Assembly (NCBI RefSeq): GCF_006345805.1
Contig: NW_021824068.1
Location: 1 to 20,071 of the forward strand
DNA length: 20,071 nucleotides
Source: Octopus sinensis
Taxonomy: Eukaryota
Reading direction: 5' to 3'
A program made the translations under genes and the position numbers. Every line of letters starts with the position of its first letter. The stretch's first letter is position 1. The notes under the pieces were generated by a model, which saw only the letters and a program-made list of their open reading frames with translations, did no database searches and was not told the DNA's origin. Shown here one piece after another: positions 1-20,071 of this stretch.

Positions 1-120
1 GATGCATATATGTGTCTTTGTCTATAAGACTCTACGTTTTCAGAGGAAGATGAGTAACTTCTTGTATCTTTAACAATCTTGTATCTGCTAAAATTTCCGT
101 CTTCCGATATTCTTCTCCAG

Positions 121-230
121 GAATGGTACGACCTACGGCTGACATGGAATCCTGAGGACTTTGGTGGAGAGACCATGCTCCATATTCCATCCGAAGACCT
201 TTGGAGACCCGACATCGTTATCTACAACAA
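121..230 (+). CDS. nAChR alpha subunit internal exon (110 nt, loop A)
   Basis: Acceptor ttcttctccag|GAA at 120/121. Translates [37 protein letters not shown](AA). Donor |gtgaac at 231 is phase 2. Missed by the ORF track. Confidence 0.93.
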
Positions 231-2840
231 GTGAACTCATTTCCTTTCTTATCTCCCTCATATTTTCTGCTTTTTTTTCTTCTTTATTCTCTAATTAGCA
301 TTTCCTCACCCTCTTTTACTCGTTTACTTGTTTTAGTCATTTGATTTTGGCCATGCTGCAGCACCGCCTTTAGTCGAGCAAATCGACCCCAGGACTTATT
401 CTTTGTAAGCCTAGTACTTATTCTATCGGTCTCTTTTGCCGAACCGCTAAGTTACAGGGGCGTAAACAAACCAGCATCGGTTGTCAAGCGATGTTGGGGG
501 GGGGGGACAAACACAGACACACAAACGTATACACACACATACATATATATATACGACAGGCTTCTTTCAGTTTCCGTCTCTCAAATCAACTCACAAGGCT
601 TTGGTCGGCCCTAGGCTACATTAGCTGGCACTTGTCCAAGGTGCCACGTAGTGGGACTGAACCCGGAACCATGTGGTTAGGAAGCAAGCTTCTTACCACA
701 CAGCCACGCCTGTATATGTTATGTTGTTTTCGGTAAATGGGGAAAATGTTTGGCGGTATTTCATCTGCGTTTACGTTCTGAGTTCAAGTATCGCCGAGGT
801 CGACTTTGCCTTTCACGGGGACGATACACGAAATACCAGTTGACCACTGGGGTCGATGTAATCACTCACCCTACTCCCCCAAACTTGCTGACCTAGTGCT
901 AAAATTTGAAACTAGTCATCATAAATTTTAACGTGAATATATAATCGAAGTCGAGAATCTGTTGTCTCTAAACAATTGTTTCTCGTCGAGTTTCACCTTC
1001 ATCGTCATCGTCATTATCCAGTCGGGTTTGTCGATAGTTGAATGATTCATCGTCGTGCGCCACGACTACAGATGATAGTAGTCAACGATAGCAAACTGTC
1101 AACGGTCTTGTTGAGTCTGACCGGAAATAGTTTATTGACTGCGTAGCATCTGGTGATATTCGCCATTGACGCTATAAGTTCATCTGCCAAAATAGGGTCA
1201 TATCCACCATGTTGCGTCCCTTGATTGCAGCCTTATAATAAACTAGCAGTATCGCCCGGCGTTGCTCGGGTTTGTAAGGGAAATGACTATAAAGCATTTT
1301 TAGAGAGTTATAGCCAAAAATCAGCAAAAAATGCATTAAAAATGGAAAAAAAATTATGGTAATTTTTTTTTTAATCGTTGACTCATCGTAGACATTTTTA
1401 GAGAGTTACTTCCCTTATATATAGCGAAAAAATGCATTAAAATGGGAAAAATGATGGTAATTATTTTTTTAAATCTAGACTCACCGTAGACGCGCGGGCT
1501 AATCCAGAAGGGCTCGATATGAATCACGACTATAAGATACCCGGGTTTGGTTAAACTGCACCGCAAAATGTGGGAGTAGTTAGGAATCTAAATCGTAGGA
1601 GACAGACACACAACCTTACTTTTATATATAAAGATATACATAATTATTTCTATTTAAAAAAAACTGTGTTAGATTGGTGATGTTTGCACTTGTTAGAAGT
1701 TCCTGGAATAATATTTCACTAAAATTTCTTGCGATGATATGTGTGTACAGAGTGTCCCAAAAGTCACTGACAGGTTTCAATTTTTAATAGCTTCCTTAAC
1801 TTTATAAATAAATGCATGAAATTTTGATACAGTATAAAGGACACAATGCCGTAGCGGGAGATTATTCTGTCTCCAAAGCACTGCTATAGCAACTGCATTG
1901 TTTCTCTTGCGGTATAAGCAGTTGTCCCATCTTGCTGGAACCATGTGTGAGGCCTTCACGTTCCTGGACTTGACTAGTCCGGATTTTTTCTTGTGGGGAT
2001 ACCTGAAAGAGAGGTTTTACGTCAAAAAACCGGAGACCCTGCTGCAACTGAAGGAGAATATCAACAGATAAATCAGAGAAGTAGGGTGTGAAACTCTTGA
2101 AGGTGTTATGGTGTAAGTTCTGGAAACAGCACGGGCGTGCGAAGCCGAAAACGACAGCCATTTAAGCGATGTCATTTTTCATGTGTGATGTAGTGGTGTT
2201 GCAAACTTTGACTTGTGCATATTGATTTCCATTATGTCCTTTATATTTTATCAAAATTTCATTCATTTATTTGGAAAGTTAAAGAAGCTATTAAACATTG
2301 AAACCCATCAGTGACTCCTTACATATTCAACAGCAAAAGTATTTTCTGTAAGCCTCGCAGTGCAGTCTTTTACAGGAATGTCATTCTATATTGCTTCACA
2401 ACAAATATCATTAACGATCCCTTTTATTCGATAAACACCATTATTTCAAAGGAATAAGGAAAAATAGTGCTTCGGCTACAGACATTTTGTCGCAGAAATA
2501 CTAAATTAATAATAATAAAAATAGTAATAATAATAACATTTGTAAAAAAAATCTTTAACACTCATCTATATCTAATATTTACCCCTCAAGTAATTATATA
2601 AATGTCGTAAATTTTCCTTAAATAATGATTTAATACGCAATAGATTTTATAGTTACTAAAGTTTTTTTCTTAGATTATATCAGTTAATCTGATAACAATT
2701 TTAAGAGGATATGACATTCTTTTAGAAATCCTGAACAACCTTGAGACACAAGTTTATAAAAATACATGTTTATATATGTATGCATTAGTGTGCATTTGTG
2801 CATATGTATATATGTATGTGTATGTGTGTACATACATATA

Positions 2841-2872
<32 letters not shown>

Positions 2873-5800
2873 GCAATACATATTCATATATTTATTATTT
2901 AATGGGAAAATTCAACAAAGCATTACTTAAATTTTCTCACCGACTTTGAATACATCCCGTAATTTTTTTTTATGTGATTCAGAAATATAGATATAAAATC
3001 AATATATTCATATATATTTCCTTTCTTCTTTTCTTTCTCTTCTTGTTTCCAGCGCCGACGGGGATTTCGTAATCACAATGTTAACAAAAGCCCTTGTGTC
3101 GTACGACGGTAAAATAGTTTGGGAACCGCCTGCTATCTACAAAACCTATTGCCCTATAGACGTAGAATATTTTCCGTTCGATACCCAGTTATGCTTCATG
3201 AAATTCAGCTCCTGGACTTACGATGGTAACGAAGTTGACTTGGTCGACTTTTGCCACGGCACCGGTCAAACGCAAGTTGATGGCAAGGTTGTGATCCTGA
3301 ATGGTATCGATATGAAAGGCTATTCTCAGAACTCTGAATGGGAAATTCTAAACGTAACATCAACTCGAGAGATCAAAACGTATCCATGCTGTCCAACACC
3401 TTACCCAATCATATTATACAACATAACAATGAGACGCATACCTCAGTTTTACACTTTGAACTTAATCATACCCTGTGTGTCAATTTCGTTCTTGACTATT
3501 CTTGTATTCTATTTACCGTCCGTGAGTGGTGAGAAAATCACTCTGTCCATATCAGTTCTCTTGGCACTGACTGTGTTCTTCTTGCTGCTTTCTGAAATCA
3601 TTCCGCCCACTTCTCTTGTGATTCCTTTAATCGGTAAATACCTCATGTTCACTATGCTAATGGTGACGGCATCGCTATTTCTGACTGTCAACGTATTAAA
3701 CATCAATTACCGAACAACCACAACTCATACAATGTCCCAATGGGTGAGGTATTACTTTTTGGAAAGACTACCCACTTTCCTTATGATGAAACGACCCCGT
3801 TTCGAAGATGAGCCGCCGATTCTGCCACCGTCCAAGATGCAAAGTTTAAGTACCTTCGACGGAGAAGAACCCGTAGAAACTCGAAGCATCACACTCAACT
3901 GCAGAGGAGAGGTGCCGACATACGAGAACATGTGTCCGCACCAGTCTATTGATGAGCCTGACCCTGGGAAGTTGGAGAAAATGCAAAGCCTTGATGACTG
4001 GACAAGCAAACTGGTGGAAGAGATGATCAGTAATGTGGAATATATTGCCAGCACCAAGAAAGATGTCGAAGAAGGCAGTGCTGTAAGTATAAACGTTTCT
4101 CTTTTGCCGTAGACTAAGGTGGGGAGCTGGCAGAATCCTTAGCACAAATAATTATAACAAATTATCATTTGTTTATAGTGATCAAATATATATGTTATAC
4201 ATTGGTTCGCTCCATCCATCAAATCGACATTCCTTGAATAGGTGCACGCCGGGTGTTGAAGTGAACGTAGGGTCACGTGAGAAGTGTTTTACTGAAGAAC
4301 ACAATGTACTGCTCAGTGTATACTCTTACTCTCTTTTACTCTTTTACTTGTTTCAGTCATTTGACTGCGGCCATGCTGGAGCACCGCCTTTAGTCGAGCA
4401 AATCGACCACGAGACTTATTCTTTGTAAGCCCAGTACTTATCCTCTCGGTCTCTTTTGCCGAACCGCTAAGTGACGGGGACGTAAACACACCAGCATCGG
4501 TTGTCAAGCAATGCTCGGGGGACAAACACAGACACACAAACACATACACACACACACACACATATATACATACATATATACGACGGGCTTCTTTCAGTTT
4601 CCGTCTACCAAATCCACTCACAAGGCATTGGTCGGCCCGGGGATATAGCAGAAGACACTTGCCCAAGATGCCACGCAGTGGGACTGAACCCGGACCATGT
4701 GGTTGGTTAGCAAGCTACTTACCACACAGCCACTCCTGTATATATATATATATATGTGTGTGTATGTGTTTTTGTGTCTGTGTTTCTCCCCACCCCCACC
4801 CCAACGTCACTTGACAACCGATGGTGGTGTGTTTATGTCCCCGTAACTTAGAGGTTAATATATATATATATATTATATATATGAAGGGCTTCTTTCAGTT
4901 TCCGTCTACCAAATCCACTCACAAGGATTTGGTCCGCCCGAGGCTATAGTGGAAGACACTTGCCCAAGGTGCCACACAGTGAGACTGAACCCGGAATTGT
5001 GGTCGAGAAACAAACTTCTTACCACACTGCCACTCCTGCATCTATGTTAGCATATAATAAATAAATTTAAATAAATTTAAAATGGTTCAATTTGTTTTCA
5101 TCCTCTTACAATATATTGGAAGCACTCCGTCGGTTACGACGACGAGGGTTCCGGTTGATCCGAATCAACGGAACAGCCTGCTCGTGAAATTAACGTGTAA
5201 GTGGCTGAGCACTCCACAGACACGTGTACCCTTAACGTAGTTCTCGGGGATATTCAGCGTGACACAGAGAGTGACAAGGCCGGCCCTTTGAAATACAGGT
5301 ACACAGAAACAGGAAGTAAGAGTGAGAAGAAGTTGTGGGAAAGAGTACAGCAGGGATCACCACCATCCCTGCCGGAGACTCGTGGAGCTTTTAGGTGTTT
5401 TCGCTCAATAACACTCACAACGCCGGTCTGGGAATCGAAACCGCGATCCTATGACCGCGAGTCAGCTGCCCTAACCACTGGGCCATTGCGCCTCCACCTT
5501 ACAATATAAAGTGTTTGCTGAGAAGATAAACTGTACATTGAAGTGCCTGGAGGCGCAATGGCCCAGTGGTTAGAGTCTCCGGCAGGGATGGTGGTGATCC
5601 CTGCTGTACTCTTTCACCACAACTTTCTCTCACTCTTACTTCCTGTTTCTGTCGTACCTGTATTTCAAAGGGCCGGCCTTGTCACTCTCTGTGTCACGCT
5701 GAATATCCCCGAGAACTACGTTAAGGGTACACGTGTCTGTGGAGTGCTCAGCCACTTACACGTTAATTTCACGAGCAGGCTGTTCCGTTGATTCGGATCA

Positions 5801-6149
5801 ACCGGAACCCTCGTCGTCGTAACCGACGGAGTGCTTCCACATTGAAGTGCAAAAATGGCTGAAATATCACAGAAGACTGCATACGCAGATCATCATATTA
5901 CCGCCATTTCTGATCCCTGTTCATATTAATTTTTTTTTATTAATATTTGTCCTTGTTCTTTTCTTCTATTTGCAGGCAGTACGTGATTGGGCCTACATCT
6001 CAACGTTGATAGATCGATTATTCCTTTGGATCTTTAGTGTGATTTGTACGATCGGAACCGTTGTCATTTACCTGAATGCACCCTCACACTTTGACAGTAG
6101 GCCTAGTTTAGGGGCAGGAGATTTCGTCAATCTTTCCTGCACTTTTTGA
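121..6149 (+). CDS. Nicotinic acetylcholine receptor alpha-type subunit (Cys-loop pentameric ligand-gated cation channel), 5'-partial, join(121..230,3053..4082,5976..6149)
   Basis: The three exons splice in frame with AG/GT boundaries (110+1030+174 nt = 437 aa + TGA). Motifs: loop [14 protein letters not shown], Cys-loop C-x13-C ([15 protein letters not shown]), loop [10 protein letters not shown], loop C YPCCPTPY (vicinal Cys, so alpha subunit), M1-M3, GEK-containing M2, M4 DRLFLWIF. From memory it is closest in style to the protostome Dalpha1-4-like group (loop-F insertion before GID). The exact orthologue cannot be assigned without a phylogeny. Confidence 0.95.
311..712 (-). mobile_element. 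tRNA-derived SINE, family A, near full length
   Basis: Minus strand: A-box-like TGGCTGTGTGG, B-box-like GGTTCAGTCCC, central (TA/TG)n, 3' (AAAGAGT)-like tail. About 85-90% similar by eye to the copy at 4322-4739. Confidence 0.85.
738..912 (+). mobile_element. tRNA-derived SINE, family B, 5'-truncated
   Basis: Contains GTTCTGAGTTCAA..CGCCGAGGTCGACTTTGCCTTTCA..CTGGGGTCGATGTAATC, which is shared with the copies at 7715-8548 and 11964-13535. Confidence 0.8.
1241..1635 (+). mobile_element. Non-autonomous Helitron/Helentron-like element (HINE/Lep1-type termini) with internal 2 x 98-bp tandem duplication
   Basis: 5' ACTAGCAGTATCGCCCGGCGTTGCTCGGG (CCCG/CGGG hairpin), 3' CAGACAGACAC..TTTTATATATAAAGAT. 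Tandem units at 1295-1392 and 1393-1490. The class assignment rests on remembered resemblance of the termini. Confidence 0.5.
1748..2316 (+). mobile_element. Tc1/mariner deletion derivative with long TIRs and a transposase C-terminal relic
   Basis: TA|CAGAGTGTCCCAAAAGTCACTG.. left end. About 70-bp imperfect inverted repeats at ~1762-1830 and ~2248-2316 (the outermost part of the right TIR is missing). 1967-2188 translates [43 protein letters not shown], the decayed WPPRSPDLTPxDFFLWG motif, with stops. Confidence 0.85.
2810..2892. repeat. (TA)n/(TATG)n microsatellite
   Basis: Direct inspection. Confidence 0.9.
3053..4082 (+). CDS. nAChR alpha subunit large exon (1030 nt; loops E/B/F/C, Cys-loop, M1-M3, intracellular loop)
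   Basis: A long polypyrimidine tract and tttccag|C GCC GAC GGG complete N-A-D-G in frame with the upstream exon. Matches ORF 3078..4112. Consensus donor GCT|gtaagt at 4082/4083 (phase 0). Confidence 0.96.
4116..4145 (+). mobile_element. 5' stub of family B SINE
   Basis: GGTGGGGAGCTGGCAGAATCCTTAGCAC matches the family B 5' end (GGTGAGCTGGCAGAATCGTTAGCAC at ~7719). Confidence 0.6.
4322..4739 (-). mobile_element. tRNA-derived SINE, family A, full length
   Basis: Same architecture as 311-712. 5' end CAGGAGTGGCTGTGTGGTAAG on the minus strand, with a tandem AAAGAGT-type tail. Confidence 0.88.
4745..5040. mobile_element. Rearranged family A SINE: middle segment in + orientation (4745-4856) joined through (TA)n to the 5' half in - orientation (~4882-5040)
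   Basis: 4750-4856 is the reverse complement of ~4462-4570. 4882-5040 is colinear with ~4582-4739. Confidence 0.75.
5117..5496 (-). mobile_element. tRNA-derived SINE, family C, full length with 11-bp TSD
   Basis: Minus strand: TGGAGGCGCAATGGCCCAGTGGTTAG (A box) ... GGTTTCGATTCCC (B box). TSD CTTACAATATA at 5105-5115 and 5498-5508. Confidence 0.92.
5548..5839 (+). mobile_element. tRNA-derived SINE, family C, with a 90-nt internal deletion (B box lost) and 12-bp TSD
   Basis: Reverse complement of the 5117-5496 copy apart from the missing 90 nt and a few differences. TSD ACATTGAAGTGC at 5535-5546 and 5839-5850. Confidence 0.92.
5976..6149 (+). CDS. nAChR alpha subunit last coding exon (MA helix end, M4, extracellular C-tail)
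   Basis: Acceptor ttcttctatttgcag|GCA (phase 0). Translates [57 protein letters not shown], matching the nAChR 'EDWKYVAMVIDRxFLW' M4 motif. Confidence 0.93.
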   Translation, partial: AVRDWAYISTLIDRLFLWIFSVICTIGTVVIYLNAPSHFDSRPSLGAGDFVNLSCTF

Positions 6150-6214
6150 ACATGTTACTCTACTGTACCCCTAATACATGTTAGTCTTGTTTTTGTTCTT
6201 ATTGGTGGTGGTAG

Positions 6215-6266
6215 TAAATATACACACATATGTATATATATATATATATATATTATATATGTATGT

Positions 6267-6341
<75 letters not shown>

Positions 6342-6696
6342 TATATATATATATATATAATAATATATATATATAATATATAATATATATATATATAATA
6401 TATATATATGTACTTGTAATTTAATATATACATAAATATATGCATCCACATATATTCATTATATATGAACACATATACATATGTTACACACACACACACA
6501 CAAATTATCTATCTATATATATAATATATATATATATTATATAAACATGTATATACATATATATATGTATATAAAAATATATATATATATGTATAAATAT
6601 ATATATATGTTTGTAGGTATATACACACATATATATGTGTGTATGTATATACGTATATATATATATATATATATATATTATACTCATATATATATA

Positions 6697-6777
<81 letters not shown>

Positions 6778-6860
6778 TATATATATATGTATACATATTG
6801 TATGTATATATATAGATATATACTATATATATATATATATGTCTGTAGGCAGATAGATAT
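6215..6860. repeat. Large compound (TA)n/(CA)n microsatellite immediately downstream of the nAChR stop codon
   Basis: Direct inspection. It produces the spurious YI-repeat ORFs. Confidence 0.95.
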
Positions 6861-6874
6861 TTAGATAGGTATAA

Positions 6875-7962: not shown

Positions 7963-8196
7963 GCGGTAAGCTGACAGAATCGTTAGCACGCCGGGCTAAA
8001 TGCTTACCGGTATTTTGTCTGCCACTACGTTCTGAGTTCAAATTCCGCCGAGGTCGACTTTGCCTTTCATCCTTTCGGGGACGATAAATTAAGGACCAGT
8101 TGCGTACTGGGGTCGATATGATCGACTATACCTCCCCACAAAATCCAGGTCTTGTGCCTATATTAGAAATTATTATTATTATTATCATTATTATTA

Positions 8197-8318: not shown

Positions 8319-8548
8319 TATTATTATTATTATGTATGCTGCAAGCTGACCGAGTCGCTTAGCACGTCGGACAAAATGAATGCTTCGAGGCATTTCTTAA
8401 GAAACTTTGAATTCAGAATCTGTGGGGACCGACCTCACCATTTATACTTTCGGGGTCGATAAAATAAAGTTCCACTCAAGTGCTGGAGCATGTGATCGAG
8501 TAATTCTTTACCCTCACAAACTGCTGGCTTCGTGCCAAAATTTCAAAA
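7264..8548 (+). mobile_element. Head-to-tail array of five family B SINE copies separated by (ATT)n/(CAT)n tracts
   Basis: Copies at ~7264-7400 (very decayed), ~7442-7658 (decayed), ~7715-7925, ~7960-8169 and ~8338-8548. Spacers (ATT)n at 7407-7441, 7659-7712 and 7927-7959, and (ATT/CAT)n at 8170-8332. Confidence 0.8.
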
Positions 8549-8550
8549 AA

Positions 8551-8762
8551 TTATTATTATCATTATTATTATTATTATGATTTGGGTCAGGTTTGGTCTT
8601 ATTCCTGGTAGGATTTATGTGGGTAGCGGGTAACCCTACTGATAACCCTTGCTGTCCCTAAGAGACAAACTTTTTGTAGGAGCTCTACTGGGGATTTTAT
8701 TGCAATCTCCTTCAGCCATTTGTCTATATTTTTGCTTACTCTTCCCAACGCAGCAACAGACT
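8551..8762 (-). mobile_element. 3' fragment of an RLE-type (R4/Dong-like) non-LTR retrotransposon with (TAA)n tail
   Basis: Minus frame SVAALGRVSKNIDKWLKEIAIKSPVELLQKVCLLGTARVISRV matches the RLE C-terminal pattern 'VGALG...LQK..LLGTA.I.R'. It is followed by (TAA)n in the element orientation. Confidence 0.75.
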
Positions 8763-11420: not shown

Positions 11421-11734
11421 AGAATAAAAAAAAAGCATATAAAAGTATCAAAAAAATTATTGGAAATATAAAAAAAATGTACTTATAGAAAATGAGGAAG
11501 GGGTGTGAAATTGTTCAAGAATGTATTGAAAGATGTCAATATTTTTGAGTTTTAGATTGCACGAAATAATTAAATTAACCATTTATAATTAAATGAACAT
11601 ACAAACACACACATATATACACACATACAATGTATGCTAAACGAAATATAATAATAACGAAGATGAAGTGTCTGTAGAAGTTATTCTCACGAGTATATTA
11701 CAATTCCAAATGTGTAATATATTATTGTCATTTT

Positions 11735-11867
11735 ATATATATATATATATATATATTACATATATTGCACATATATATATATGTATGTATCTATATATAC
11801 ATATATATGTGCACATATTAGATATATATTACATATATATAATATATATATATATATTATATATATA

Positions 11868-11902
<35 letters not shown>

Positions 11903-11940
11903 ATATATATACTTACACATATATGGGCATATATATACAT
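11735..11940. repeat. (TA)n compound microsatellite
   Basis: Direct inspection. Confidence 0.9.
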
Positions 11941-11963
11941 AATTGTACTAGTTATGCTATTGT

Positions 11964-13535
11964 CGGCCAGTGGGATGGCTGAATCGTTAGAGTGTCGCCT
12001 AAATAAGTCCTGCTGTATTGTGACTGTTTGCATTCCGGGTTCAACTCTCACGGCAGTCAATTCTGCTTCTCCTTCATCACGCCCAGGATAGATAAAATAA
12101 AGTACCAGTCATGTACTGGGAACAATAGTAATAATGAAATCTCTCTCACCTCCCTCTGTCCAAATGATGGAATAGTACCTAAATCCATTTCTACTCTCGG
12201 CACAAGGCCTGAAATGTTGGGGGAGAGGGCTATCGATTCCATTGACTCTAGTATTCAACCGGTACTTATTTTATCGACCCCGAAAGCATGAAAGGCGAAG
12301 TGGACCTCAGTGTAATCCGAATTCAGAACATAAAGACGGATGAAATGGCGCTAAGCGTTTTGTCCGGCATGCTAACAATTCTACCTGCAAACCGCCTTCA
12401 TTGTACCTCAACTAAAAACCATTATCATTGGGTGGTAAGGTGAGAAGCTTGCAGAGTTGTTAGCACGCCGGACAAAATTCTAGGTGGCATTTCGTCCGTC
12501 TTTATGTTCTGAGCTCAAATTCCGCTGCGGTCCATTCTGCCTTTCAACTTTTCGGGGTCTTTCAAATAACCACCTGTCGAGCACTGGGCTCGATATATTC
12601 TACTTCACCCCTCCCCTCAAAACTTCCGGCCTTGCGTATATAGTTGAATGGATTTTTACTCAGCAGTGATTGGCAGAGTTGTTAGAGAGCTGGATACTAT
12701 TGTATAGTACTTTTTCCGGTTCTTTACATTCTGAGTTCAAATCCCTGCAAAGTCGACTTTGCCTTCCATGTTTCTACAGTCAATAGGATCAACCAAATTC
12801 TTTCGTCAATGTGTCTAGCTTTGTGTCATTTTTAGAGGCTATTAAAGAGAGGGAATTCAAATTCCGCCGAGGTCGACTTTGCCTTTCCTCCTTTCGGGGT
12901 CGATAAATAAAGTACCAGTTTCGCACTGGGGTCGATGTAATCGACTTAACCCCTTTGTCTGTCCTTGTTTGTCCCCTCTGTGTTTAGCCCCTTGTGGGTA
13001 GTAAAGAAATATATTAAATAGAGGGAATCTGAAGATTCGGTGGAGCGTCGGACAAGATTCCTTGTAGTATTTGTGGTGACTCTTCACGTTCTGAGTACAA
13101 ATCAGGGATCCTGGTTGGCCTAATTCTGTTCAGATTTTTTATTTTAAAGCCGTCCCTTAAAGTCCTGTCCAGATACCAAAAATCAAGTATAGGGTGCCAA
13201 AATCTTTATGGTTTCTTCATAAAGATTATCTTACCTTTTCGTTCTTCCGACGTCGATAAAATAGTGCGCCAGTCAAGTCCGTTGGCCCCAGTGAGGCACT
13301 GGGGCCAATGCAATCAACTGAAACCCTCCCCTTCAAATTTCTGGCCTTGTATTTAAGATTGAAACTACTAGAGGGGGGTGGGTTGGCAGAATCGTCAGTG
13401 CGTCGAACAAAATTCCTTACGATATATTTTCAGACTTTTAACATTTTGAATAAAAACCTTACAAAGGTCACCTTGGCCTTTTATCCTTTCGGAATCGATA
13501 AAACTAAGTACCAGTGAAGTACTACGATCGATTTT
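11964..13535. mobile_element. Dense cluster of about seven family B-type SINE copies or fragments
   Basis: + ~11964-12120; - ~12180-12398; + ~12436-12650; + ~12662-12792; + ~12853-13010 (different 3' tail TGTCTGTCCTTGTTTGTCCCC..); + ~13029-13370 (split by a ~125-bp insert); + ~13372-13535. Confidence 0.75.
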
Positions 13536-14021: not shown

Positions 14022-14311
14022 CGCCTCCCCTCTTTCACTCTCGCTCTGTCTCCCTCTTTCTCTTTTTCTCGCTCGTTTCATTAATTTATTATTTATTTTA
14101 ACGAAAACACAAATTTTAAATTAATCATGACATACATTGTTGTATGTTGTACGTGGTGTGGATGTATGTGTGTGGGGTGTGTATGTATTTAAGTCTATGT
14201 ATGTGTAGATATGAATATATACATGCATATATATATTTGTGTATGTATAAGTATTATATATGTGTATATATATATATATACATATACATATACATATATA
14301 TATATGTATAT

Positions 14312-14345
<34 letters not shown>

Positions 14346-14540
14346 ATATTATATAATATTATATATTTATATAATATATATTGATAACAAACTTGACTTA
14401 GCATCATACGATTTAAAGTTTCATGGGTCCATCTTATGCGCCGACGAAACTTTACATTGTATAGTGCTAAGTGATTTGTTATATAACAAAGTATGTCGAG
14501 GGCCTCTTGGTTCTTTCTCTGACTCTCTCTCTCTCTCTCC

Positions 14541-14603
<63 letters not shown>

Positions 14604-14773
14604 TATATATATTATATATATATATCTATATATAGTATATATATATTATATATATACAGATTATATACATATATTATATATATATAATATACATATACAT
14701 ATATATACATACATATATATATACACACACATATACATAAATATATGCACACACACACACACCACACATACAC

Positions 14774-14831
<58 letters not shown>

Positions 14832-14832
14832 G
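13735..14832. repeat. Compound (CT)n/(CTAT)n/(TA)n/(TG)n/(CA)n microsatellite blocks (13735-14070, 14150-14380, 14520-14832)
   Basis: Direct inspection. Confidence 0.9.
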
Positions 14833-14945
14833 TGTAGACATCATAAATAAGAACGGAGATTTATACATCTTCAAAATTCGTTTATTACAATATTTCAATC
14901 CGACACGTGTTTCTGCTGCATAAGCGTCCTAATGCCCCTTGATGC
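14833..14945 (-). mobile_element. Possible Penelope-like element terminal-repeat relic
   Basis: Minus strand: hairpin, then GAAAC-ACGT-GTC, then AATAAA, abutting (TA)n. This resembles the layout of Penelope pseudo-LTRs, but the CUGANGA box is not intact. Confidence 0.3.
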
Positions 14946-18840: not shown

Positions 18841-19319
18841 CGCTCATCACTACGACCAGTCCTTTCATCTCAGATCATCGATTCTCTATAGCTTTTTTTT
18901 TGTTTTTTCTTGCTCATGCCTGTCCTGCAGGGGTTGACTTCAAACCGTTTAGACGGCGAGATAATGAGATCAATCTCACCGGTCGTGCACGGCGTACAAA
19001 GACTATTGGCTCTGCCATTTCAAGCAGATCAAGCAATTAAAAACAAACAAAACAACATAACTCTGAAGAAAGATGTTTTCTTAAACATTTTCTATGAGAA
19101 TAAAACGCATTCTTGATACAAGAGAAAGAAAAAACAACATTTAATTGAAAATAAGAGAATACTTATAGCCTGAAAAAAAAAACTAAAGAAATATATTACA
19201 AGAACAACAAGAATAAAAACAGCAGTAAAAACAACAACAACAAAGAAAACAACAGTAACAGTAGCAGCAGCCTCGAGCTAACGCATGCGTATATACAAAG
19301 GCATACAGGTGTATATGCG

Positions 19320-19640
19320 TGCATACATATACATATATGTGCGCGTCTATATATATTTACGTGTGTGTCTGTGGTGTGTATGTGTACTCATACACACACC
19401 AACACACATTCACCACACACATATATATATATACATATATATATATATGTATGTTTGTATATGATTTATATATATATGTACACATATACATATATATATA
19501 TATATTATATATATATATATATATATCATATATATAGTATATATGTTGTATGTATGCATGTATGTATGTATATGTATATGTATATATATATTCTATATTA
19601 TATATATATAATATAATTATATATAATATAATATATACGT
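19320..19640. repeat. Compound (TA)n/(TG)n/(CA)n microsatellite
   Basis: Direct inspection. Confidence 0.9.
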
Positions 19641-20071
19641 AATCGCCCGATTTATCGCAGAGCAGAGAAATAATCAGAGTTTTCCTTAGCAAGCGACAAG
19701 TTCAGTTCTATGACAAAAGATGTCACTGCAGATAAGCAGTTTGATAATACAGAAGAAAAATATTTTGAGTGAGAAAACGGTCGTCTGGTGGCTGCCTTTG
19801 TAGAATAGTTGTTGGCTTGATATCGCCATCGTATTATTGTTATCAATTGCTAAAGCCGTATCAAACGGCCATGTTGTCGTCTGCTGCAGTCGATATTTTA
19901 TCAATGCCTAAAGTAAACAAAGTGTCCACTGTCAATTTCTTAAGGAAGCAGAAACCAATAATTGAGTTTGTATTGCTCAGCACTACAACGAAACGGAACT
20001 TTTATAGACAATTTACTCTCAACTTTTTTTCCTTCTTCATTTAATCACAACTTCAGTCTTTCTCTTTCTCT

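What the first reader, a model, noticed from the sequence alone, without database searches (positions are those of the whole stretch)
5105..5975. Near-perfect long inverted SINE pair in the last nAChR intron: a giant pre-mRNA hairpin just upstream of the M4 exon
Seen: two family C SINEs lie head-to-head, 51 nt apart, each with its own intact TSD (11 and 12 bp), so they are independent insertions. 5117-5380 pairs with 5574-5839, and the outer 186 bp (5117-5302) are perfectly complementary. A further perfect 26-bp stem (5471-5496 with 5548-5573) closes the loop, with a 90-nt bulge between the stems. The hairpin ends ~136 nt before the 3' splice site at 5975. Established: long dsRNA is the ADAR substrate, coleoid cephalopods edit neural transcripts extensively, and nearby intronic hairpins can act as editing inducers or alter splicing. 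Inference: this structure could recruit ADAR to a neurotransmitter-receptor pre-mRNA, modulate inclusion of the M4 exon, or be kept homogeneous by arm-to-arm gene conversion. It could also simply be two very young, neutral insertions.
Basis: partly seen in the sequence, partly recalled or inferred. Interest (0 to 1): 0.7.

Follow-up and report, generated by a model that had tools for sequence, protein, structure and literature searches.

The report
Young inverted SINE pair in intron
Two very recent, independent insertions of the same short mobile element sit in opposite orientations in the last intron of an Octopus sinensis acetylcholine-receptor gene. They would fold the pre-mRNA into a roughly 290-bp hairpin, which is real but belongs to a common, well-described class with no sign of a selected function here.

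Summary
The arms 5117-5302 and 5654-5839 are 186 nt long and 100% complementary. There are further stems of 36, 43 and 26 bp, an 89-nt bulge and a 51-nt loop. RNAfold gives -668 kcal/mol (z = -44).

The window is the whole 20,071-bp contig VCDQ01002293.1 of Octopus sinensis. The gene is a partial nAChR alpha-like subunit, and the intron (4083-5975) precedes the terminal M4 exon.

The orthologous O. bimaculoides intron has an empty site for both elements. It carries one copy of each target-site duplication, with the same 26-nt spacer between them. The arms are therefore two independent, lineage-specific retropositions.

An unrelated copy in O. vulgaris is 98.5% identical to the right arm, while the two arms are 98.1-98.5% identical to each other. 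Gene conversion is not needed to explain the arm identity.

The hairpin is not conserved. It leaves the branch region and polypyrimidine tract free, and the adjacent exon shows no clear duplex.

The most likely reading is an IRAlu-like, incidentally hyper-edited intronic dsRNA. Published work shows octopus genomes are unusually rich in such structures. ADAR recruitment is plausible but untested here. Effects on recoding or splicing are speculative.

Interest is low. This is a new member of a known kind.

The parts
3053..4082 (+). Penultimate coding exon of the nAChR alpha-like gene. It covers the end of the ligand-binding domain, M1-M3 and the cytoplasmic loop.
   Evidence: Pfam Neur_chan_LBD and Neur_chan_memb. 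The translation is 97% identical to the O. bimaculoides nAChR protein. An acceptor AG ends at 3052 and the donor GTAAGT starts at 4083.
4083..5975 (+). Last intron (1,893 nt). It holds older SINE copies at about 4313-4740 and 4858-5045, and the inverted pair.
   Evidence: GT at 4083 and AG at 5974-5975, with the reading frame continuous across the junction. It is colinear with O. bimaculoides L001 72573-73596.
5105..5115 (.). Target-site duplication of the left element, outer copy (CTTACAATATA).
   Evidence: Identical 11-mer at 5498-5508. It occurs once in O. bimaculoides, as cttacaTAata.
5116..5497 (-). Left SINE, full length (382 nt), antisense to the gene. Its head with A-box and B-box-like motifs lies at the 5497 end.
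   Evidence: Full-length alignment to dispersed copies: L007 40897-41281 at 95.6% and L001 51074-51450 at 91%. The motifs TGGCCCAGTGG and GGTTTCGATTCC can be read in the sequence.
5303..5338 (.). The only stretch where the arms differ. The left copy has two 1-nt deletions and a TC>CT swap.
   Evidence: The right copy matches the O. vulgaris and O. bimaculoides copies at 3 of the 4 positions.
5382..5470 (-). An 89-nt segment of the left copy, including the B-box-like motif, that the right copy lacks. It forms the bulge of the hairpin.
   Evidence: It is present in the full-length O. vulgaris and O. bimaculoides copies.
5498..5508 (.). Target-site duplication of the left element, inner copy.
5509..5534 (.). 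A 26-nt stretch of original intron sequence between the two insertion sites.
   Evidence: It aligns to the single-copy O. bimaculoides sequence between the two target sites.
5535..5546 (.). Target-site duplication of the right element, inner copy (ACATTGAAGTGC).
   Evidence: (family D2).
5547..5838 (+). Right SINE (292 nt), sense to the gene, with an 89-nt internal deletion that removes the B-box-like part.
   Evidence: Its body is 98.5% identical to the unrelated O. vulgaris copy.
5839..5850 (.). Target-site duplication of the right element, outer copy.
   Evidence: It occurs once in O. bimaculoides.
5117..5839 (+). Predicted pre-mRNA hairpin. Stems of 186, 36, 43 and 26 bp, an 89-nt bulge and a 51-nt loop (5497-5547).
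   Evidence: -668 kcal/mol, z = -44.
5976..6149 (+). Terminal coding exon (M4 helix, C-terminus and the TGA stop).
   Evidence: The translation is identical to the C-termini of the O. sinensis and O. vulgaris proteins.

Best explanation
Two copies of one young SINE subfamily retroposed independently, 26 bp apart and in opposite orientations, into the last intron of an Octopus sinensis nAChR alpha-like gene. Both insertions happened after the split from O. bimaculoides.

The element is about 382 nt long. It has a head with Pol III A-box and B-box-like motifs and no long A-tail. Both copies are almost unmutated from their common source, so they are nearly perfectly complementary.

In the pre-mRNA they should snap into a roughly 290-bp hairpin that loops out about 720 nt of the intron. 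By analogy with inverted Alu pairs, and given the documented behaviour of octopus repeats, this duplex is most likely bound and promiscuously hyper-edited by ADAR. It would then be discarded with the intron, with no selected role in recoding or splicing.

**Shown:** the anatomy, the target-site duplications, the empty orthologous site, the family membership, the youth of the copies and the thermodynamic fold.

**Inferred:** folding in vivo, ADAR binding and neutrality.
For: - **Source and gene.** The window is the complete contig VCDQ01002293.1 of GCA_006345805.1, with the gene at 103-6149.
- **Empty site.** O. bimaculoides L001 about 73418-73471 carries one copy of each target site and the 26-nt spacer, flanked by colinear intron at 81-95% identity.
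- **Target-site duplications.** Each arm has its own perfect duplication.
- **Dispersed family.** There is a full-length copy in O. vulgaris (L007 40897-41281) and one in O. bimaculoides (L001 51074-51450, with its own duplication). Partial copies sit at about 91% and older ones at about 80%.
- **Youth.** Body identities are L-R 98.1%, R-O. vulgaris copy 98.5% and L-O. vulgaris copy 97.0%. Only 2 substitutions separate the O. vulgaris copy from the 186-nt arm.
- **Fold.** z = -44.
- **Splice signals.** The splice sites, the CTGAT/TTAAT branch-like motifs and the pyrimidine tract (about 5911-5972) lie outside the stem.
- **Literature.**
  - Octopus shows the strongest hyper-editing signal of the species studied.
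  - It has an exceptionally high fraction of loci (4.4e-3) in long, nearly perfect dsRNA.
  - Across the species studied, most such structures are formed by neighbouring inverted repeats (all PMC5625713).
  - SINEs make up 11.6% of the O. vulgaris genome, with 4,544 recently active SINE insertions (PMC13282606).
- **Local base rate.** There are 29 other inverted pairs of at least 100 bp within 3 kb in 161 kb of octopus DNA.
Against: - No RNA data could be examined, so neither hyper-editing nor neutrality is demonstrated.
- Only one independent young copy could be sampled. The genome-wide identity distribution is therefore not known.
- L and R share two states (a T, and one G fewer, in gagTctccggca-ggg) that the O. 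vulgaris and O. bimaculoides copies lack. This fits a shared source subfamily but is also what conversion would give.
- The four L/R differences are clustered in 36 nt. My estimate is about a 1% chance if they were four independent, uniformly placed events.
- Two same-family young insertions 26 bp apart are rare. My rough estimate, based on one young copy per 161 kb, is a handful per genome.
- The contig is a short unplaced piece of a long-read assembly. Polishing could have inflated or deflated the identity.
Confidence: 0.77

Rival explanations
1. The hairpin is a functional, lineage-specific editing inducer. It would concentrate ADAR on the pre-mRNA and raise site-selective recoding in the flanking exons (3053-4082 and 5976-6149).
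For: Inverted Alu pairs induce site-selective editing several hundred nucleotides away in cis (PMC4053975). Long intronic stems act as editing inducer elements for neurotransmitter-receptor transcripts (PMC5654063, PMC3479170). The stem here is long and nearly perfect and ends 136 nt from the M4 exon. Coleoids recode neural transcripts heavily (PMC5625713, PMC9989829).
Against: The element is absent from O. bimaculoides, whose protein is 97% identical. Any role would therefore be very recent. Described inducer elements near efficiently edited sites are conserved (PMC5654063). No clear target duplex was found: the last-exon region gives z = -1.8, with 2 of 100 shuffles folding as well. No editing data were available.
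Confidence: 0.07
2. The arms are kept identical by arm-to-arm gene conversion, rather than by youth alone.
For: The perfect blocks are 186, 43 and 26 nt long. L and R share two states not seen in the O. vulgaris and O. bimaculoides copies. The differences are confined to one 36-nt patch.
Against: The right arm is as similar to an unrelated O. vulgaris copy (98.5%) as to the left arm (98.1%). That copy differs from the 186-nt block at only 2 sites. The 89-nt length difference has not been homogenised. The shared states are equally explained by a common source subfamily.
Confidence: 0.06
3. The hairpin alters splicing or 3'-end choice of the receptor transcript, that is, use of the M4 exon.
For: Strong intronic structure can change splice-site use (review PMC7404189). 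The O. vulgaris annotation carries an isoform, CAI9731363.1, that replaces M4 with an acidic low-complexity tail after '...EEGSAAV'. Alternative 3' ends at this junction are therefore at least predicted.
Against: Both arms lie within one intron, so pairing only shortens the effective intron. The splice sites, branch-like motifs and pyrimidine tract are outside the stem. The alternative tail is not encoded in the window, and it looks like a low-complexity prediction. It is unknown whether O. vulgaris has the pair at all.
Confidence: 0.04
4. The structure is an assembly or polishing artefact, or a single-event inverted duplication, foldback element or twin-priming product, rather than two insertions.
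For: The window is a short unplaced contig of a long-read assembly. The arm differences include two 1-nt indels and a TC/CT swap, which are typical consensus errors.
Against: Each arm has its own perfect target-site duplication. The 26-nt spacer and both flanks are colinear with O. bimaculoides. A chimeric palindromic read or a single-event duplication would not produce this. The two arms also differ by an 89-nt internal deletion.
Confidence: 0.04
5. The hairpin is processed by Dicer into endogenous siRNAs against this SINE family, in the manner of an hpRNA locus.
For: A 186-bp perfect duplex with a short loop is an ideal Dicer substrate. This rests on my own knowledge of Drosophila hpRNA loci.
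Against: No small-RNA data were available. The hairpin is intronic and nuclear, and expected ADAR hyper-editing antagonises dicing. Nothing distinguishes this locus from the many other inverted pairs.
Confidence: 0.02

Closest known systems
Inverted-repeat Alu (IRAlu) pairs in primate introns and UTRs, the main substrate of promiscuous ADAR hyper-editing
   Same: Two copies of one abundant SINE family lie in opposite orientation within one transcription unit, arose by independent insertions, and are predicted to form a long near-perfect intramolecular dsRNA. The same rule is reported across Metazoa, and octopus is the strongest case (PMC5625713, PMC9989829).
   Different: This is an unrelated SINE family, about 382 nt, with A/B-box-like motifs and no A-rich tail. 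The identity is much higher (98-100%) and the spacer much shorter (51 nt) than in a typical Alu pair. From my own knowledge (Lobachev et al. 2000, Stenger et al. 2001), such close, near-identical inverted Alus are depleted in human DNA because they are recombinogenic. Editing was not examined here.
Editing inducer elements (Gabra-3, GluA2 and GluK2 intronic stems; NEIL1 and GLI1 Alu pairs)
   Same: A long stable intronic stem within a few hundred nucleotides of coding exons of a neurotransmitter-receptor gene.
   Different: Inducer elements near efficiently edited sites are conserved and paired with a short duplex that holds the target adenosine (PMC5654063). This stem is absent from a congener. 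No target site or clear duplex is known.
Recently active octopus SINEs
   Same: The element is dispersed, has target-site duplications and has copies at 80-98% identity in O. vulgaris and O. bimaculoides. This fits the reported SINE expansion and the 4,544 recently active SINE insertions in O. vulgaris (PMC13282606).
   Different: I could not tie the element to a named library family. ARAGORN and Rfam do not recognise the head as a tRNA. The right copy is an internally deleted variant.
Intronic complementary repeats that regulate circular RNA formation (my own knowledge: Zhang et al. 2014, Jeck et al. 2013)
   Same: Inverted SINE pairs in introns of a neural gene.
   Different: Back-splicing is promoted by pairs that flank exons. 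A pair inside one intron, as here, would compete with such pairing, if it does anything.

Membership tests
SINE (non-autonomous Pol III-type retroposon) | Many dispersed copies at unrelated loci | tested here: met
   Copies at L007 40897-41281, 13546-13727 and 38328-38486, and at L001 51074-51450 and 58281-58458.
SINE (non-autonomous Pol III-type retroposon) | Each copy flanked by its own target-site duplication | tested here: met
   Perfect duplications of 11 bp and 12 bp. The L001 copy has its own duplication, gtcatcgacttaca.
SINE (non-autonomous Pol III-type retroposon) | Empty orthologous site in a related genome | tested here: met
   O. bimaculoides L001 about 73418-73471.
SINE (non-autonomous Pol III-type retroposon) | Internal A and B promoter boxes in the head | tested here: met
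   TGGCCCAGTGG and GGTTTCGATTCC can be read in the left copy and in the O. vulgaris and O. bimaculoides copies. The consensus motifs are from my own knowledge. The right copy keeps only the A box.
tRNA-derived SINE specifically | Head recognisable as a tRNA (cloverleaf or tRNA model) | tested here: not met
   ARAGORN finds no gene. Rfam finds no tRNA match, even at E <= 10 on 5370-5510. Only box motifs support a tRNA origin, so I do not file it as tRNA-derived.
SINE (non-autonomous Pol III-type retroposon) | 3' tail shared with a partner LINE | not tested
   The 3' 180 nt also occurs at 78-83% identity in other elements. No LINE was identified.
IRAlu-type inverted-repeat dsRNA (ADAR hyper-editing substrate) | Two same-family repeats in opposite orientation in one transcript, close together | tested here: met
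   Both lie inside intron 4083-5975, with a 51-nt loop.
IRAlu-type inverted-repeat dsRNA (ADAR hyper-editing substrate) | Long, nearly perfect predicted duplex | tested here: met
   -668 kcal/mol, z = -44.
IRAlu-type inverted-repeat dsRNA (ADAR hyper-editing substrate) | Clusters of A-to-G mismatches in RNA reads over both arms | not testable with these tools
   No RNA-seq access.
Editing inducer element | Evolutionary conservation of the stem | tested here: not met
   Absent in O. bimaculoides. No copy of the family was found in the Argonauta locus, whose last intron is about 680 nt.
Editing inducer element | A nearby short duplex holding a selectively edited adenosine | tested here: inconclusive
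   The fold of 5851-6160 gives z = -1.83. Edited sites are unknown.
Editing inducer element | Editing falls when the stem is removed | not testable with these tools
   Needs a minigene or a comparison of natural presence and absence.
Single-event palindrome (foldback or MITE element, twin priming, inverted duplication) | One target-site duplication around the whole structure, with the spacer not being original host sequence | tested here: not met
   There are two separate duplications, and the 26-nt spacer is orthologous host intron.

The most novel reading that the evidence does not exclude
The pair would be a very recent, possibly still polymorphic, natural gain of a near-perfect ADAR-recruiting hairpin. 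It sits 136 nt from the M4 exon of a neuronal acetylcholine-receptor subunit. It would measurably change recoding or 3'-end choice of that transcript in O. sinensis relative to congeners that lack it. That would make it a natural experiment on how new cephalopod editing sites are born.
Probability: 0.06. Interest if true: 0.55.

Novelty: new member of a known kind. Interest (0 to 1): 0.2.

Why it matters
As it stands, this is a clean textbook example rather than a discovery. It shows, with an empty-site control, how two fresh SINE insertions create a long dsRNA inside a neural gene. This is the class of structure reported to drive the exceptional hyper-editing signal of octopus transcriptomes.

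Its practical value is as a test locus. The structure is nearly perfect, very young, absent from O. bimaculoides, and next to coding exons of a receptor gene. Comparing carriers with non-carriers could show whether a new intronic hairpin changes nearby editing or splicing in a cephalopod.

At the DNA level, a near-identical inverted pair with a spacer of about 50 bp is the kind of quasi-palindrome expected to be unstable. Its population frequency would therefore be informative.

Tried and rejected
- **O. vulgaris orthologous intron, the closest species.** One isoform is not on record. The other gene range is 111 kb and no DNA is served. The neighbouring paralogue locus L007 shows no synteny with the window.
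- **More O. vulgaris or O. sinensis DNA from paralogues.** Two genes were too long.
- **Sampling the SINE family through its ORF in the protein collection.** There was a single hit, an O. bimaculoides UniRef entry, so this was a dead end.
- **Exact look-up of the last-exon ORF, to find other individuals.** Nothing is on record.
- **Logan contigs that carry the large exon (L003-L006).** They come from a species only about 90.7% identical and end before the intron of interest.
- **Rfam and ARAGORN.**
  - The window gives only microsatellite-driven sub-threshold miRNA hits.
  - One sub-threshold mir-3473 hit lies on the inner stem, at 38 bits against a gathering score of 71.8.
  - No tRNA was found.
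- **The alternative C-terminal tail of the O. vulgaris isoform.** It was searched in the window and the loci, and only low-complexity noise was found.
- **Readings rejected.** Chance complementarity, a single-event inverted duplication or foldback element, and a palindromic-read assembly artefact. All are excluded by the separate target-site duplications and the colinear empty site.


Full report
**Observation**

- The repeat finder reports arms 5117-5302 and 5654-5839 of 186 nt at 100% complementarity.
- It also reports 5303-5338 / 5617-5652 (36 nt, 94%) and 5339-5381 / 5573-5615 (43 nt, 100%).
- An inner stem 5471-5496 / 5548-5573 is 26 nt and 100% complementary, with 51 nt between its arms.
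- BLAST of each copy against the window gives 98.5% over 267 columns, with 2 mismatches and 2 one-base gaps. It finds no third copy.
- The unpaired segment of the left arm is 5382-5470, which is 89 nt.
- RNAfold of 5100-5980 returns a single continuous hairpin at -668.4 kcal/mol. Dinucleotide shuffles average -255.9 +/- 9.3, so z = -44. Folded as DNA, the same region gives z = -62.
- The direct repeats CTTACAATATA (5105-5115 and 5498-5508) and ACATTGAAGTGC (5535-5546 and 5839-5850) are perfect.

**Where it is**

- The ORF across 3078-4109 matches Pfam Neur_chan_LBD (1.3e-30) and Neur_chan_memb (5.1e-53). The translation of 5976-6146 matches the last 29 positions of Neur_chan_memb, which is the M4 helix.
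- An acceptor AG ends at 3052, GTAAGT starts at 4083 and an acceptor AG lies at 5974-5975. The frame is continuous across 4082|5976 and ends in TGA at 6147-6149.
- The spliced 400-aa product is 97% identical to O. bimaculoides 'neuronal acetylcholine receptor subunit alpha-4 isoform X1'.
- Its 90% cluster contains an O. sinensis partial protein whose only contig is 20,071 bp long.
- The look-up of that protein returns GCA_006345805.1 contig VCDQ01002293.1, with the gene at 103-6149.
- The window is therefore an entire short, unplaced contig of the O. sinensis assembly. The intron is the last one of a nicotinic-receptor-type subunit gene.

**What the arms are**

- Both arms are copies of one dispersed element of about 382 nt.
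- The right copy (5547-5838) is in the sense orientation of the gene. The left copy (5116-5497) is antisense. The two 5' heads therefore face each other.
- The head carries TGGCCCAGTGG (A-box-like) and GGTTTCGATTCC (B-box-like). ARAGORN and Rfam do not recognise it as a tRNA, even at E <= 10 on the isolated head. I call it a SINE with Pol III-type boxes and not, strictly, a tRNA-derived SINE.
- Other copies exist at unrelated places:
  - a full-length copy in O. vulgaris (L007 40897-41281);
  - a full-length copy with its own target-site duplication in O. bimaculoides (L001 51074-51450, 91%);
  - partial copies at about 91% and older ones at about 80%.
- The right copy lacks 89 nt, including the B-box-like motif, that all full-length copies have.

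**Independent, lineage-specific insertions**

- The O. bimaculoides orthologue (L001) is colinear with the window on both sides. Window 2875-4309 aligns at 95.2%, 4860-5110 at 80.7% and 5838-6253 at 91.2%.
- Between these blocks, O. bimaculoides has only about 33 bp where the window has 728 bp.
- Reading that site and aligning it to the window with both elements removed shows four things in order:
  - one copy of the first target site, cttacaTAata;
  - the same 26-nt spacer;
  - one copy of ACATTGAAGTGC;
  - the downstream intron.
- This is a classic empty site for both elements at once. It excludes a single-event inverted duplication, a foldback element, twin priming and a palindromic-read artefact. 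It also shows that both insertions post-date the O. sinensis / O. bimaculoides split, cited as 13-33 My in PMC13282606.
- The Argonauta hians orthologue has a last intron of about 680 nt. No copy of the family was found in the 9 kb held.

**How young, and is conversion needed?**

Over the 262-nt body shared by all copies, the identities are:

| Pair | Identity |
|---|---|
| Left - right | 98.1% |
| Right - O. vulgaris copy | 98.5% |
| Left - O. vulgaris copy | 97.0% |
| Any of these - O. bimaculoides copy | 88-90% |

- Within the 186-nt perfect block, the unrelated O. vulgaris copy differs at only 2 positions.
- The right arm is therefore as close to a random young copy in a sister species as it is to its own partner. 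The arm identity is what youth alone predicts.
- All left/right differences lie in 5303-5338 and are private to the left copy: two 1-nt deletions and a TC>CT swap.
- The right copy matches the other copies at 3 of the 4 positions. At the fourth it has C where they have T.
- These clustered small changes could be one complex mutation, or even consensus errors of a long-read assembly.
- Using the published scale for O. vulgaris of JC 0.065 for about 18 My (PMC13282606), one to four events in about 586 nt suggests an age of roughly 0.5-2 My. This is my rough inference, not a measurement.
- L and R share two states absent from the other two full-length copies. That fits a common source subfamily, but it cannot formally exclude conversion.

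**How common is this kind of thing?**

- In the 161 kb of octopus DNA fetched for other reasons, I found 29 inverted pairs of at least 100 bp within 3 kb. That is 3 in O. bimaculoides L001 and 26 in O. vulgaris L007.
- The best of these are 92-93% identical.
- The window's pair is the most perfect and most closely spaced of the pairs found in octopus DNA.
- Published work reports the following:
  - Octopus has the strongest hyper-editing signal of the species studied.
  - The fraction of octopus loci able to form long, nearly perfect dsRNA is exceptionally high, at 4.4e-3.
  - Across the species studied, most such structures are neighbouring inverted repeats (all PMC5625713).
  - Evolutionarily young repeats are the primary editing targets across Metazoa (PMC9989829).
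  - SINEs are 11.6% of the O. vulgaris genome, with 4,544 recently active SINE insertions (PMC13282606).
- With about one young copy per 161 kb (n = 1, so very uncertain), random placement in a genome of about 2.8 Gb would give a handful of young same-family pairs within 50 bp. This configuration is therefore rare but not inexplicable.

**Likely mechanism**

The following steps are inferred.
- When the intron is transcribed, the left arm is made first. About 50 nt later the right arm emerges, so intramolecular pairing should be fast.
- The hairpin loops out about 720 of the 1,893 intron nucleotides.
- The 5' splice site lies more than 1 kb upstream. The candidate branch motifs (ctgat at 5911-5915, ttaat further on), the pyrimidine tract and the 3' splice site are 70-136 nt downstream of the stem and unpaired.
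- The most probable fate is promiscuous ADAR hyper-editing of the arms and removal with the intron, as for intronic inverted Alus.

**The functional readings**

- *Editing inducer.*
  - There is direct precedent. Inverted Alus and intronic stems raise editing at sites hundreds of nucleotides away (PMC4053975, PMC5654063, PMC3479170).
  - However, those elements are conserved when they serve efficiently edited sites, and they need a separate short duplex around the target.
  - Here the stem is absent from a congener with a 97% identical protein. The last-exon region folds only marginally better than shuffles (z = -1.83).
- *Splicing or M4 use.*
  - The O. vulgaris annotation contains an isoform that replaces M4 with an acidic low-complexity tail right after '...EEGSAAV'.
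  - That tail is not encoded in the window. I could not learn whether O. vulgaris has the pair.
- *Gene conversion.* This is unnecessary, for the reasons given above.
- I rate each of these below 10%.

**At the DNA level**

The pair is a quasi-palindrome of about 2 x 290 bp with a spacer of about 50 bp. From my own knowledge (Lobachev et al. 2000, Stenger et al. 2001), such close, near-identical inverted SINEs are recombinogenic in yeast and depleted from the human genome. Its survival fits a very recent origin, and it may be polymorphic. The contig's unplaced status is compatible with, but no evidence for, a haplotype-specific structure.

**Verdict**

The hairpin is a member of the well-known class of inverted-SINE intronic dsRNAs, which is especially abundant in octopus. 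Functional claims remain untested, and on present evidence they are unlikely.

Noticed in passing
P0121 (O. vulgaris CAI9731363.1) versus P0125 / window 5976-6149: The O. vulgaris annotation has an isoform that lacks M4. After '...EEGSAAV' it continues 'LFMNNTGAGKRG...EEEEEEE...GGGGGGGG'. The shared 'AV' plus L would fit use of only the first 7 nt of the M4 exon (a GTGATT donor-like site at 5983), spliced to a distant exon. The O. vulgaris gene range (111 kb) is about 40 kb longer than in O. bimaculoides. It may be a prediction artefact.
   Followed up: partly
window 313-712, 4313-4740, 4858-5045: These are copies of a different, older SINE family (tttcagtttccgtctaccaaatccactcacaagg...). The intronic copy is shared with O. 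bimaculoides (L001 72918-73345). O. sinensis has an extra partial copy of its 3' half (4858-5045) that maps to the same O. bimaculoides segment. This suggests a local duplication, or a second insertion, just upstream of the inverted pair.
   Followed up: no
window 5117-5302 (3' 180 nt of the SINE); L007 39234-39403, 14680-14861, 73416-73596; L001 58281-58458: The 3' module that forms the perfect 186-bp stem also occurs on its own at 78-83% identity in other elements. It may be a tail shared between SINE families, or with a partner LINE.
   Followed up: no
window 5474-5570 (-): The two facing SINE heads plus the loop give a sub-threshold Rfam hit to mir-3473, at 38.4 bits against a gathering score of 71.8. 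It is a 26-bp stem with a 51-nt loop and is probably meaningless.
   Followed up: no
pre-insertion site, window 5509-5534 and flanks: On its own strand, each element is preceded by a similar short motif 5' of its target-site duplication: AAACTGT|ACATTG... and AAACACTT|TATATTG.... This may hint at an endonuclease target preference, but n = 2.
   Followed up: no
L002 (Argonauta hians) 7965-8168 / 8472-8675: A 204-bp inverted pair, 98.5% identical and 304 bp apart, lies downstream of the orthologous gene. It is another near-perfect hairpin-forming repeat, in a distant octopod.
   Followed up: no
L003-L006 (Logan SRR11869384-94): Whole-genome contigs of an unidentified octopod carry the large exon at about 90.7% DNA identity to the window. 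That is more distant than O. bimaculoides (95%).
   Followed up: no
window 6200-6870, 11660-11990, 14150-14850, 19290-19700 and elsewhere: There are very abundant (TA)n, (CA)n and (TATG)n microsatellites. They produce dozens of sub-threshold Rfam hits to mir-297, mir-466 and mir-3149, and long spurious ORFs.
   Followed up: no
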